A stretch of DNA of 64,000 bases from assembly GCF_032062105.1 (NCBI RefSeq), contig NW_026933337.1, positions 186,001 through 250,000 on the forward strand. The letters run 5' to 3'. Position 1 is the first letter of the stretch; each line of letters begins with the position of its first letter. This stretch comes from Saccostrea cucullata. Taxonomy: Eukaryota. A program made the position numbers and the translations under genes. Positions 568 through 1,995 of the stretch are shown here, piece by piece. The notes below the pieces were generated by a model that saw only the letters and a program-made list of their open reading frames with translations, had not been told where the DNA came from and ran no database searches.

Positions 568-1995
568 GACAATAAAATAGATGATGCACTGGAGGATAAT
601 GTACAACGCAGAAACTCCGACGAAAACAACAAGGATTTAGATTTGGACTCGGCAAAAACAAATGATGCTGCTGGTGAGAATAGTATGGAGAAAAGGGATA
701 TCGATGATGAAGATGGTGATGATTTAGAAAAGAGAGAAGATGAGGATGCTGCTGACAATGCTTTAGAGAAAAGAGAAGATACTGATGATGATGACAATGA
801 TGATGATTTAGAGAAAAGGGATGATGAAGATGATGATGGAGATGATGATTTAGAGAAAAGGGATGCTGATGATGACGACGATGATGATTTAGAAAAGAGG
901 GATGCTGATGATGACGATGATGATTTAGAAAGAAGGGATGCTGATGATGAAGACGATGATGATTTANNNNNNNNNNNNNNNNNNNNNNNNNNNNNNNNNN
1001 NNNNNNNNNNNNNNNNNNNNNNNNNNNNNNNNNNNNNNNNNNNNNNNNNNNNNNNNNNNNNNNNNNNNNNNNNNNNNNNNNNNNNNNNNNNNNNNNTGGA
1101 TAGTGAAGAAGATTTAGAAAAAAGAGATGATGACGATAATGATGATGATGATGATGAATTAGAAAAAAGAGGTGATGATGATGAGGATGAAGATGATGAA
1201 TTAGAGAAAAGGGGTGATGATGATGAAGAGGATGATGATGATTTAGAGAAAAGGGGTGATGATGATGATGATGATGACAATGATGATTTAGAAAAAAGAG
1301 AAGATGATGATGACAACAATGAAGATAAAAGAGAAACTGCTGGAATAGATGTTGATGATGAAGATGAGGAGGAAGATATTGATGTAAGTGGACAATCAAA
1401 AAGAAGTGCTTCTGAGACTGAATCTGATGTTGATATAGAAAAACGTGATGTTTCCAATGTCCAAAGAGTAAAACGTGATATTAACGATGAAATAGAAGAT
1501 GAAGATGTAAACGACGAAGACATTCAGGACGAAACATTACGGGAGGTCAATGAAGATGATGATGAAGATATTGACTTTGAAGGTATGGACAATAATAACA
1601 TCGAAATAAGAAACGCTGATGATGATGAGGATAGTGACGAGAACAGTAGGGATGGTGAGGACAATGAGGAAACAGAGGATATTGCCAGCAATGAGGAGGG
1701 GAAATTAACAAGAGGGGCATCAAATGAAGCAACAAATATCGAGTCAGGTGAAGATAAAGGAACAAGGGCGGCAGAAGATAAGGATGGCACTAAATCAGGG
1801 AGCTTTGACAAACTGATGGAGGAACTGCAAGACTTGACTTCCAACACAAACAGTGAAAGCAAACGGGAAGATTCAGCAAGTGTGGACAGTAACGCAGAAA
1901 AGAGGGGTGATAATAACCAAGGGGGTCCTAATACTACTTTATCAGCAGAGCAGATCCAACAGGAGATAAACAAATTATTGAAACAGACCAAATAA
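568..1995 (+). CDS. Terminal exon of an Asp/Glu-rich protein with tandem (D/E)n-LEKR units; putative prohormone-convertase-processed acidic peptide precursor (5' exons outside window)
   Basis: Acceptor TTTTCAG at 561-567, then an open frame DNKIDDALEDNVQRRNSDENNKDLDLDSAKT... in frame with the ORF-track ORF 643-1995 (TAA 1993-1995). 17 KR and 2 RR sites are visible. N gap 967-1096 lies inside the repeat. AATAAA at 2291. Confidence 0.85.
   Translation, partial: DNKIDDALEDNVQRRNSDENNKDLDLDSAKTNDAAGENSMEKRDIDDEDGDDLEKREDEDAADNALEKREDTDDDDNDDDLEKRDDEDDDGDDDLEKRDADDDDDDDLEKRDADDDDDDLERRDADDEDDDDLXXXXXXXXXXXXXXXXXXXXXXXXXXXXXXXXXXXXXXXXXXXXDSEEDLEKRDDDDNDDDDDELEKRGDDDEDEDDELEKRGDDDEEDDDDLEKRGDDDDDDDNDDLEKREDDDDNNEDKRETAGIDVDDEDEEEDIDVSGQSKRSASETESDVDIEKRDVSNVQRVKRDINDEIEDEDVNDEDIQDETLREVNEDDDEDIDFEGMDNNNIEIRNADDDEDSDENSRDGEDNEETEDIASNEEGKLTRGASNEATNIESGEDKGTRAAEDKDGTKSGSFDKLMEELQDLTSNTNSESKREDSASVDSNAEKRGDNNQGGPNTTLSAEQIQQEINKLLKQTK
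967..1096. other. Assembly gap (130 N) inside the LEKR repeat
   Basis: Run of N. Confidence 1.

What the first reader, a model, noticed from the sequence alone, without database searches (positions are those of the whole stretch)
568..1480. Polyprotein-like precursor that could release a library of poly-Asp peptides at LEKR sites
Seen: tandem units such as DIDDEDGDDLE-KR, EDTDDDDNDDDLE-KR, DADDDDDDDLE-KR and GDDDEDEDDELE-KR. The LEKR motif is kept (with synonymous variation GAA/GAG, AGA/AGG) while the acidic spacer changes in length. Established: KR is the PC1/PC2/kexin cleavage signal, and neuropeptide precursors normally alternate acidic spacers with bioactive, often Gly-amidated, peptides. 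Here there is no G-KR and nothing but acidic segments. Inference: the acidic 10-13-mers are themselves the products, for example diffusible Ca2+/carbonate-binding peptides for shell or cement mineralisation, or granin-like granule matrix. That would be a neuropeptide-style processing route for biomineral modulators, unlike uncleaved Aspein/Asprich-type proteins.
Basis: partly seen in the sequence, partly recalled or inferred. Interest (0 to 1): 0.85.

Follow-up and report, generated by a model that had tools for sequence, protein, structure and literature searches.

The report
Oyster precursor of short acidic peptides
An oyster gene encodes a secreted, hormone-precursor-like protein with a conserved Lys-Arg cutting site about every 12 residues, so it is probably chopped into a dozen or more very acidic, calcium-binding peptides; whether these pack secretory granules or help build the shell is untested.

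Summary
Window 568-1995 is the last coding exon of a single-copy gene. Two upstream exons outside the window add a signal peptide and a furin-type site; they are inferred from splice signals, not from RNA. The visible exon has 17 KR and 2 RR sites (shuffles average 1.8 KR) and 11 complete acidic units of 9-13 aa. L-E-K-R codons vary almost only synonymously (76:10); the spacer codons vary mostly non-synonymously (16:112). Two homologues at about 50% identity keep the poly-Asp/KR array and five downstream cleavage sites. A close relative's RNA runs cover the 3' half. 'Nothing but acidic segments' is wrong: the best-conserved parts are two amphipathic helices, one in a 29-aa C-terminal peptide. 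No family match was found, and the motifs were absent from the oyster neuropeptide and shell supplements searched. Convertase processing is likely (about 0.85) but not shown. The best reading is granin-like, cation-binding granule cargo (0.45); a shell or cement role (0.25) has no direct evidence. Cutting a repeat precursor into acidic biomineral peptides is already known from diatom silacidins, so this is a new variant, not a new category. The N stretch was not filled.

The parts
568..1995 (+). Terminal coding exon, phase-0 acceptor (AG at 566-567) to TAA; 475 codons counting the N stretch. Upstream coding exons lie outside the window: L009 7701-7817 (ATG at 7718, signal peptide, GT donor, phase 1) and L009 8775-8842 (68 nt, contains R-D-K-R, restores phase 0).
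   Evidence: splice model inferred from sequence, not confirmed by RNA
568..696 (+). N-terminal unique acidic segment with one RR (607-612) and the first KR (691-696)
697..966 (+). Left part of the poly-Asp/L-E-K-R array: six complete units (10-13 aa; one ends in RR) and one unit cut by the N stretch
967..1096 (.). N stretch (gap or masked); not filled, content not used
   Evidence: see full report
1097..1332 (+). Right part of the array: one partial and five complete units (9-13 aa), each closed by KR
1333..1404 (+). Conserved 22-aa acidic peptide flanked by KR on both sides in all three species
1465..1476 (+). Furin-type site R-V-K-R; appears as R-A-P-R and K-K-R in the two homologues
1591..1620 (+). 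Conserved N-N-N-I-E-I-R-N-A-D motif (possible monobasic site), identical in three species
1804..1839 (+). Conserved amphipathic helix 1, followed by KR at 1861-1866
1867..1905 (+). 11-aa peptide between two conserved KR sites
1906..1992 (+). C-terminal 29-aa peptide, net charge 0, not amidated; holds conserved amphipathic helix 2 (1945-1989), the best-conserved part
1996..2158 (+). Start of the probable 3' untranslated region, covered by contigs of a related organism's runs

Best explanation
A single-copy, apparently oyster-restricted gene for a secreted, intrinsically disordered precursor of about 530 aa. SHOWN: signal-peptide-like exon, open frame, 20 visible dibasic sites (19 in this exon, 1 in exon B), conservation of the sites, transcription of the 3' half in a relative. 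INFERRED: it enters regulated secretory granules. There PC1/PC2-type convertases cut after K-R (most sites lack the P4 Arg that furin needs; two have it), and carboxypeptidase E trims the basic pair. This releases at least 11 non-amidated 9-13-mers of charge -6 to -11, several longer acidic pieces and a helical C-terminal peptide. It would work like a granin: the polyanion binds Ca2+ and cationic cargo to condense the granule core, the two amphipathic helices serve as sorting or aggregation elements, and cutting into short pieces lets the matrix dissolve and releases diffusible cation-binding peptides at exocytosis.
For: Signal peptide: 11-residue hydropathy peak of 3.1 followed by V-Y-A/A-P; the only such exon in 207 kb scanned, with criteria set after the fact. 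Exon phases add up. KR enrichment. Codon test: motif 76 synonymous to 10 non-synonymous pairwise differences, all 10 from one K-to-R that keeps the dibasic site; spacers 16:112 and 8:89 (pairs are not independent). Five sites in the unique half are kept in three species at 47-52% identity, one as RVKR/RAPR/KKR, which suggests selection for cleavage rather than for letters. P1' is always D, E, G, S, N or A, never Pro or bulky aliphatic. None of 19 codon changes fixed against the relative hits a KR or a conserved motif. Disordered model with only two helices. Convertase P-domain genes and the PC2 chaperone 7B2 are in the genome. A full CRE palindrome lies about 50 bases before the signal-peptide exon, the only one in 39 kb upstream (CREs in granin promoters are from my own knowledge). 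Contig depth differs by several hundred-fold between runs, a weak hint of restricted expression.
Against: No peptide has been detected, and tissue and cell type are unknown. No match to Pfam Granin (the genome search had no positive control) and no granin signature (pattern from memory). The motifs were not found in the text supplements of two oyster neuropeptide surveys. No RNA covered 480-804, so the splice junctions are unconfirmed. Poly-Asp composition is more typical of shell proteins than of granins, which are Glu-rich (own knowledge). dN/dS in the unique half against the close relative is only about 0.65 (5 synonymous and 14 non-synonymous codon changes on 126 and 540 sites).
Confidence: 0.45

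Rival explanations
1. Biomineral peptide library: mantle, haemocyte or larval cement-gland cells cut the precursor into poly-Asp peptides that bind Ca2+ and calcite surfaces and stabilise amorphous carbonate or tune crystal growth in foliated or chalky shell or cement.
For: Asp-dominated units (Asp 42% of the left part). Lineage-restricted and fast-evolving, like many shell proteins. Precedents: silacidins released from a repetitive precursor (PMC4557024) and Pif cut at RMKR (PMC11291548). Unit length of 9-13 aa recurs in the homologues although sequences differ.
Against: No tissue or proteomic evidence. Conserved motifs were absent from one C. gigas shell-proteome supplement (it may not list sequences). 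The genome has a separate 306-codon Asp-rich, Aspein-like frame with no KR, which already fits the uncleaved shell-protein role. Most sites are not furin consensus, which points to PC1/PC2-bearing granule cells.
Confidence: 0.25
2. Classical hormone precursor: the signal is the conserved 28-29-aa helical C-terminal peptide (and perhaps the 22-mer), and the acidic units are spacers or chaperoning pro-pieces that expanded neutrally.
For: The C-terminal peptide is neutral, amphipathic, released by a conserved KR and the best-conserved part. Acidic spacers are normal in neuropeptide precursors (own knowledge).
Against: It does not explain why more than a dozen extra KR sites are held at codon level inside the array. 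No amidation, Cys or known family signature.
Confidence: 0.13
3. Uncleaved polyampholyte: the protein is secreted whole, and regularly spaced K-R pairs are charge patterning (as with the basic-acidic repeats of Pif80) for binding carbonate or polyanions.
For: No cleavage has been shown. Dense acidic residues around a site can slow some convertases (own knowledge). Tandem duplication alone can spread one motif.
Against: In the window the order is K-R or R-R, never R-K or K-K. Six KR also occur in the non-repetitive parts (P about 1e-4), and one site switches between KR and RxxR forms across species.
Confidence: 0.1
4. Precursor of anionic, zinc- or metal-binding defence or detoxification peptides from haemocyte granules, resembling the short poly-Asp anionic antimicrobial peptides of sheep lung.
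For: Several units are Gly followed by an Asp run, like those peptides (the comparison and the zinc load of oyster granulocytes are from my own knowledge).
Against: No expression or activity data. A paper search for this combination found nothing. Single copy, without the paralogue diversity usual for oyster defence peptides.
Confidence: 0.05

Closest known systems
Silacidins of the diatom Thalassiosira pseudonana (PMC4557024)
   Same: A highly repetitive precursor is proteolytically cut at short basic motifs at the end of each repeat, releasing Asp/Glu-rich peptides.
   Different: The silacidin motif is RXL, its peptides are Ser-rich and need phosphorylation, and the mineral is silica. Here the motif is K-R, the units are almost Ser-free, and there is a conserved helical C-terminal region. 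Analogy only; no homology was tested or expected.
Granins (chromogranin A/B, secretogranin II, VGF, proSAAS); features from own knowledge
   Same: Signal peptide, acidic and disordered chain, many dibasic sites, short conserved amphipathic helices, CRE near the start of the gene.
   Different: No PF01271 match and no granin signature. Asp-rich rather than Glu-rich, with a tandem array of near-identical 9-13-aa units. Granule location not shown.
Aspein / Asprich / Pif acidic shell proteins of pteriomorph bivalves
   Same: Secreted, Asp-rich and lineage-restricted; Pif is cut at a dibasic RMKR site (PMC11291548).
   Different: Aspein and Asprich have long uninterrupted Asp tracts, and an Aspein-like frame elsewhere in this genome has no KR. 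Pif is cut once into two large proteins and has VWA and chitin-binding domains, absent here.
Molluscan multi-copy neuropeptide precursors (FMRFamide, APGWamide, DLamide type)
   Same: Signal peptide and tandem units bounded by KR.
   Different: No G-KR amidation signal in the window and no conserved non-acidic core in the units; motifs not found in the text supplements of the oyster catalogues PMC4200219 and PMC8398477.
Fungal Kex2-processed repeat proteins and yeast alpha-factor precursor (own knowledge)
   Same: Aliphatic P4, K-R and acidic P1' match the Kex2-type optimum; polyprotein layout.
   Different: Different kingdom; their released units are bioactive, non-acidic peptides.

Membership tests
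Granins | Match to Pfam Granin PF01271 or the C-terminal granin signature | tested here: not met
   no hit; none in the genome, no positive control; signature absent, pattern from memory
Granins | Signal peptide, acidic disordered chain, many dibasic sites | tested here: met
   the signal peptide rests on an inferred exon and hydropathy, SignalP not available
Granins | Location in dense-core granules; aggregation at low pH and high Ca2+ | not testable with these tools
   needs immunolocalisation and biochemistry
Aspein/Asprich | Long uninterrupted Asp-rich tract without regular basic cleavage sites | tested here: not met
   KR every 11-15 residues; contrast with L003/L004
Aspein/Asprich | Expression in outer mantle and presence in calcitic shell | tested here: inconclusive
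   run tissues are coded; no motif hit in one shell-proteome supplement
Classical neuropeptide precursors | Repeated conserved bioactive core, often with G-KR amidation signal | tested here: not met
   no G-KR and no non-acidic core in the window units; one G-KR unit in homologue L016
Classical neuropeptide precursors | Conserved convertase sites and signal peptide | tested here: met
Classical neuropeptide precursors | Neuronal expression and MS-detected mature peptides | tested here: inconclusive
   motifs absent from the text supplements of two oyster surveys; very acidic peptides ionise poorly, so absence is weak
Silacidins | Repeats released at RXL motifs; Ser-rich, phosphorylated units | tested here: not met
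   motif is K-R and the complete array units contain no Ser
Silacidins | Peptides occluded in a biomineral and active in precipitation | not testable with these tools
   needs shell peptidomics and in vitro assays

The most novel reading that the evidence does not exclude
An animal uses the prohormone-convertase pathway to make a graded set of short poly-Asp peptides that act on calcium carbonate in shell or cement, a calcareous counterpart of diatom silacidins. This would supply a gene for some of the small, very acidic soluble-matrix molecules that tryptic shell proteomics tends to miss.
Probability: 0.25. Interest if true: 0.8.

Novelty: new variant of a known kind. Interest (0 to 1): 0.58.

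Why it matters
Either leading reading fills a gap. If it is granule matrix, oysters have a granin-like protein with no detectable homology to vertebrate granins, which bears on how invertebrates build dense-core granules. If it is a shell or cement component, it gives a defined, synthesisable set of 9-13-mers and a named processing step for the very acidic soluble fraction of oyster shell. Such peptides would be largely invisible to standard proteomics: tryptic cuts coincide with the natural cuts, and poly-Asp ionises poorly. The prediction is cheap to test, because exact peptide masses and a conserved antigenic C-terminus follow from the sequence. The surprise is moderate, since the processing logic has precedents and no function is shown.

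Tried and rejected
Microsatellite or frame artefact: rejected. The KR codons vary synonymously, the frame stays open for about 670 bases beyond the array, and two distant homologues share the layout. Nuclear acidic protein (nucleolin-like, basic pairs as NLS): unlikely given the signal-peptide exon and dispersed single KR pairs. Paralogue family: none found. Pfam, NCBIfam, PDB sequence and ESM Atlas searches gave nothing. Two searches for full-length homologues gave no hit. This is uninformative: both hits that were found are C-terminal fragments cut off from their Asp arrays by apparent contig frameshifts, so composition filters probably drop full-length forms (inference). Fold search was not run because the model is mostly disordered (pTM 0.14). 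Paper searches for the motifs, the run accession, anionic peptides and mollusc granins found nothing relevant. One paper id recalled from memory was wrong, and one paper had no supplements held. Rows that fell in the N stretch were set aside and not used.

Full report
OBSERVATION. Splitting the two readable parts at KR/RR gives six complete units left of the N stretch and five right of it, 9-13 aa long with net charge -6 to -11, plus two cut units. The visible exon has 17 KR and 2 RR; composition-preserving shuffles give 1.75 KR on average and at most 8 in 10,000. Outside the repeat there are still 6 KR against 0.9 expected. Every basic residue of the visible array is in a pair (26 of 26). There is no G-KR in the window.

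THE N STRETCH. I did not fill 967-1096. The left frame is set by the acceptor at 566-567 and the right frame by the open frame to TAA 1993-1995 and by homology. They agree at the stated length, which alone is weak (1 in 3). Better evidence comes from elsewhere: in two homologues the poly-Asp/KR units run directly into the unique C-half, and the unique C-half is single-copy. A continuous exon is therefore likely, not proven. Disclosure: a genome-wide pattern count meant to look for other copies returned three rows with coordinates inside the stretch, and one search listed a match spanning it, so it may be masked rather than unread. I set those rows aside, did not use them for frame or unit number, do not repeat them, and made no further search there.

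GENE MODEL. The window is G000:C15474:186001-250000. Upstream DNA (L009) holds exon A (L009 7701-7817): AG acceptor, ATG at 7718, a hydrophobic stretch with an 11-residue hydropathy of 3.1, a V-Y-A/A-P cleavage pattern and a GTAAGT donor in phase 1. Exon B (8775-8842, 68 nt) is open in phase 1, carries R-D-K-R and ends in phase 0, matching the terminal exon. A crude scan of 207 kb found no other signal-peptide-like start with a donor (criteria chosen after seeing exon A). The product would be about 530 aa. The joined model was not searched; exon A and the terminal exon were searched apart. My one read-laying run covered only window 480-2400 and had no contig on 480-804, so the junctions are inferred. 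The animal is an oyster by my recollection of the assembly size and repeats; another agent's note names Saccostrea cucullata. I did not verify this.

EXPRESSION. Contigs from four runs (three filed as organism A, one unlabelled; only one is on record as RNA) cover 1326-2158 at about 96% identity, with contig depth from 3.5 to about 2700. Tissues are coded, depth is a poor measure of expression, and no silent control stretch was laid. This makes transcription likely and hints at restricted expression, no more.

SELECTION ON THE CUT SITES. Among 11 visible L-E-K/R-R motifs, pairwise codon differences are 76 synonymous and 10 non-synonymous, all 10 from one K-to-R change that keeps a dibasic site. 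The four codons before give 16:112 and the three after 8:89. Pairs are not independent and repeats homogenise, but the contrast lies within the same units. Two homologues, P0001 (Logan run, L015) and P0002 (ENA assembly, L016), are 47-52% identical. Read across one apparent frameshift each with X, both have the same kind of array, and five sites in the unique half are kept; one appears as RVKR, RAPR or KKR. P1' is D, E, G, S, N or A in all 39 sites scored, and P4 is most often Leu, compatible with PC1/PC2 or kexin-type enzymes (own knowledge). Against the close relative there are 14 non-synonymous and 5 synonymous codon changes (omega about 0.65), many in the linker 1634-1751, none in a KR or conserved motif. 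The genome encodes several convertase P-domains and 7B2.

The frame continues 500 bases beyond 1480. The conserved islands are a KR-bounded 22-mer (1333-1398), the motif at 1591-1620, an amphipathic helix (1804-1839), a KR-bounded 11-mer and a neutral C-terminal 29-mer with a second helix (1945-1989). AlphaFold gives a disordered chain with just these two helices (three-sequence alignment, pTM 0.14). A CRE palindrome lies at L009 7645, about 50 bases before exon A, the only one in 39 kb upstream, though five occur in the 64-kb window; this is suggestive only.

MECHANISM. Processing at KR is likely (about 0.85 over all readings that need it). The dense, conserved cutting of the array suggests that short acidic pieces are themselves selected, as products or as a way of dissolving a matrix. 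Non-furin sites point to regulated granules. Signal peptide, disorder, acidity, many dibasic sites, terminal amphipathic helices and the CRE together resemble how granins work, so cation-binding granule cargo is my best reading (0.45). It is not a member of the granin family by sequence. The mineral reading (0.25) rests on Asp content and analogy; the genome also has a separate Aspein-like frame with 185 Asp in 306 codons and no KR. Lesser rivals are a hormone precursor for the C-terminal helix (0.13), an uncleaved polyampholyte (0.10) and anionic metal-binding defence peptides (0.05).

KNOWN OR NEW. No match in Pfam, NCBIfam, PDB or the ESM Atlas, and only two unnamed fragments among 1.8 billion representatives. 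The motifs are absent from the paper library and from the text supplements of two oyster neuropeptide surveys and one shell proteome. These blanks are limited: full-length relatives were probably filtered out, and an 'uncharacterised' RefSeq model may well exist. The logic has precedents: the silacidin precursor is highly repetitive and releases Asp/Glu-rich peptides at RXL motifs (PMC4557024), and Pif is cut at RMKR (PMC11291548). I found no description of an animal precursor cut at KR into a dozen poly-Asp peptides.

VERDICT. A real, conserved, probably transcribed gene with good sequence evidence for convertase processing and an untested function; a new variant of a known kind.

Noticed in passing
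L003/L004 (G000:C21406, about 249.4-250.3 kb, - strand): A 306-codon open frame with 185 Asp, 33 Ser, 31 Glu, 15 Tyr and no KR: an Aspein/Asprich-like exon, useful as the uncleaved contrast.
   Followed up: partly
window 5331-5972 (-): Last exon of an OGFr-like gene (PF04664, E 2e-19) with a charged tail, convergent on the precursor gene.
   Followed up: partly
window about 23000-34420 (+): Exons of a half-type ABC transporter (PF00005), resembling mitochondrial ABCB8/ABCB10 by eye.
   Followed up: partly
window 43095-45717 (-): ETS-domain gene (PF00178), SPDEF-like by eye; a 39-bp repeat of 3.9 copies at 45530-45681 lies in frame just 5' of one exon.
   Followed up: partly
L009 7645-7670 and 2684-2770: Full CRE palindrome plus a half site just before the signal-peptide exon; about 5 kb further upstream a TATA-like box next to a half CRE and a possible donor, perhaps a non-coding first exon.
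   Followed up: no
L015 about 218; L016 about 262: Each homologue contig has one apparent frameshift separating the Asp array from the C-half; probably assembly errors, not checked. L016 also has a short internal repeat ending S-P-R and one unit ending G-K-R.
   Followed up: partly
L006 (G000:C2206, about 120-123 kb, +): A 581-codon acidic open frame with long tandem repeats and one Cys per repeat, no KR; unidentified.
   Followed up: no
L005 (G000:C19197, about 554-557 kb): A long repetitive region with a 478-codon open frame reading Met/Glu/Val-rich; another frame may be the true one (Gly/Asp-type repeat).
   Followed up: no
window 53042-53170: A second N stretch of 129 bases; left alone.
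   Followed up: no
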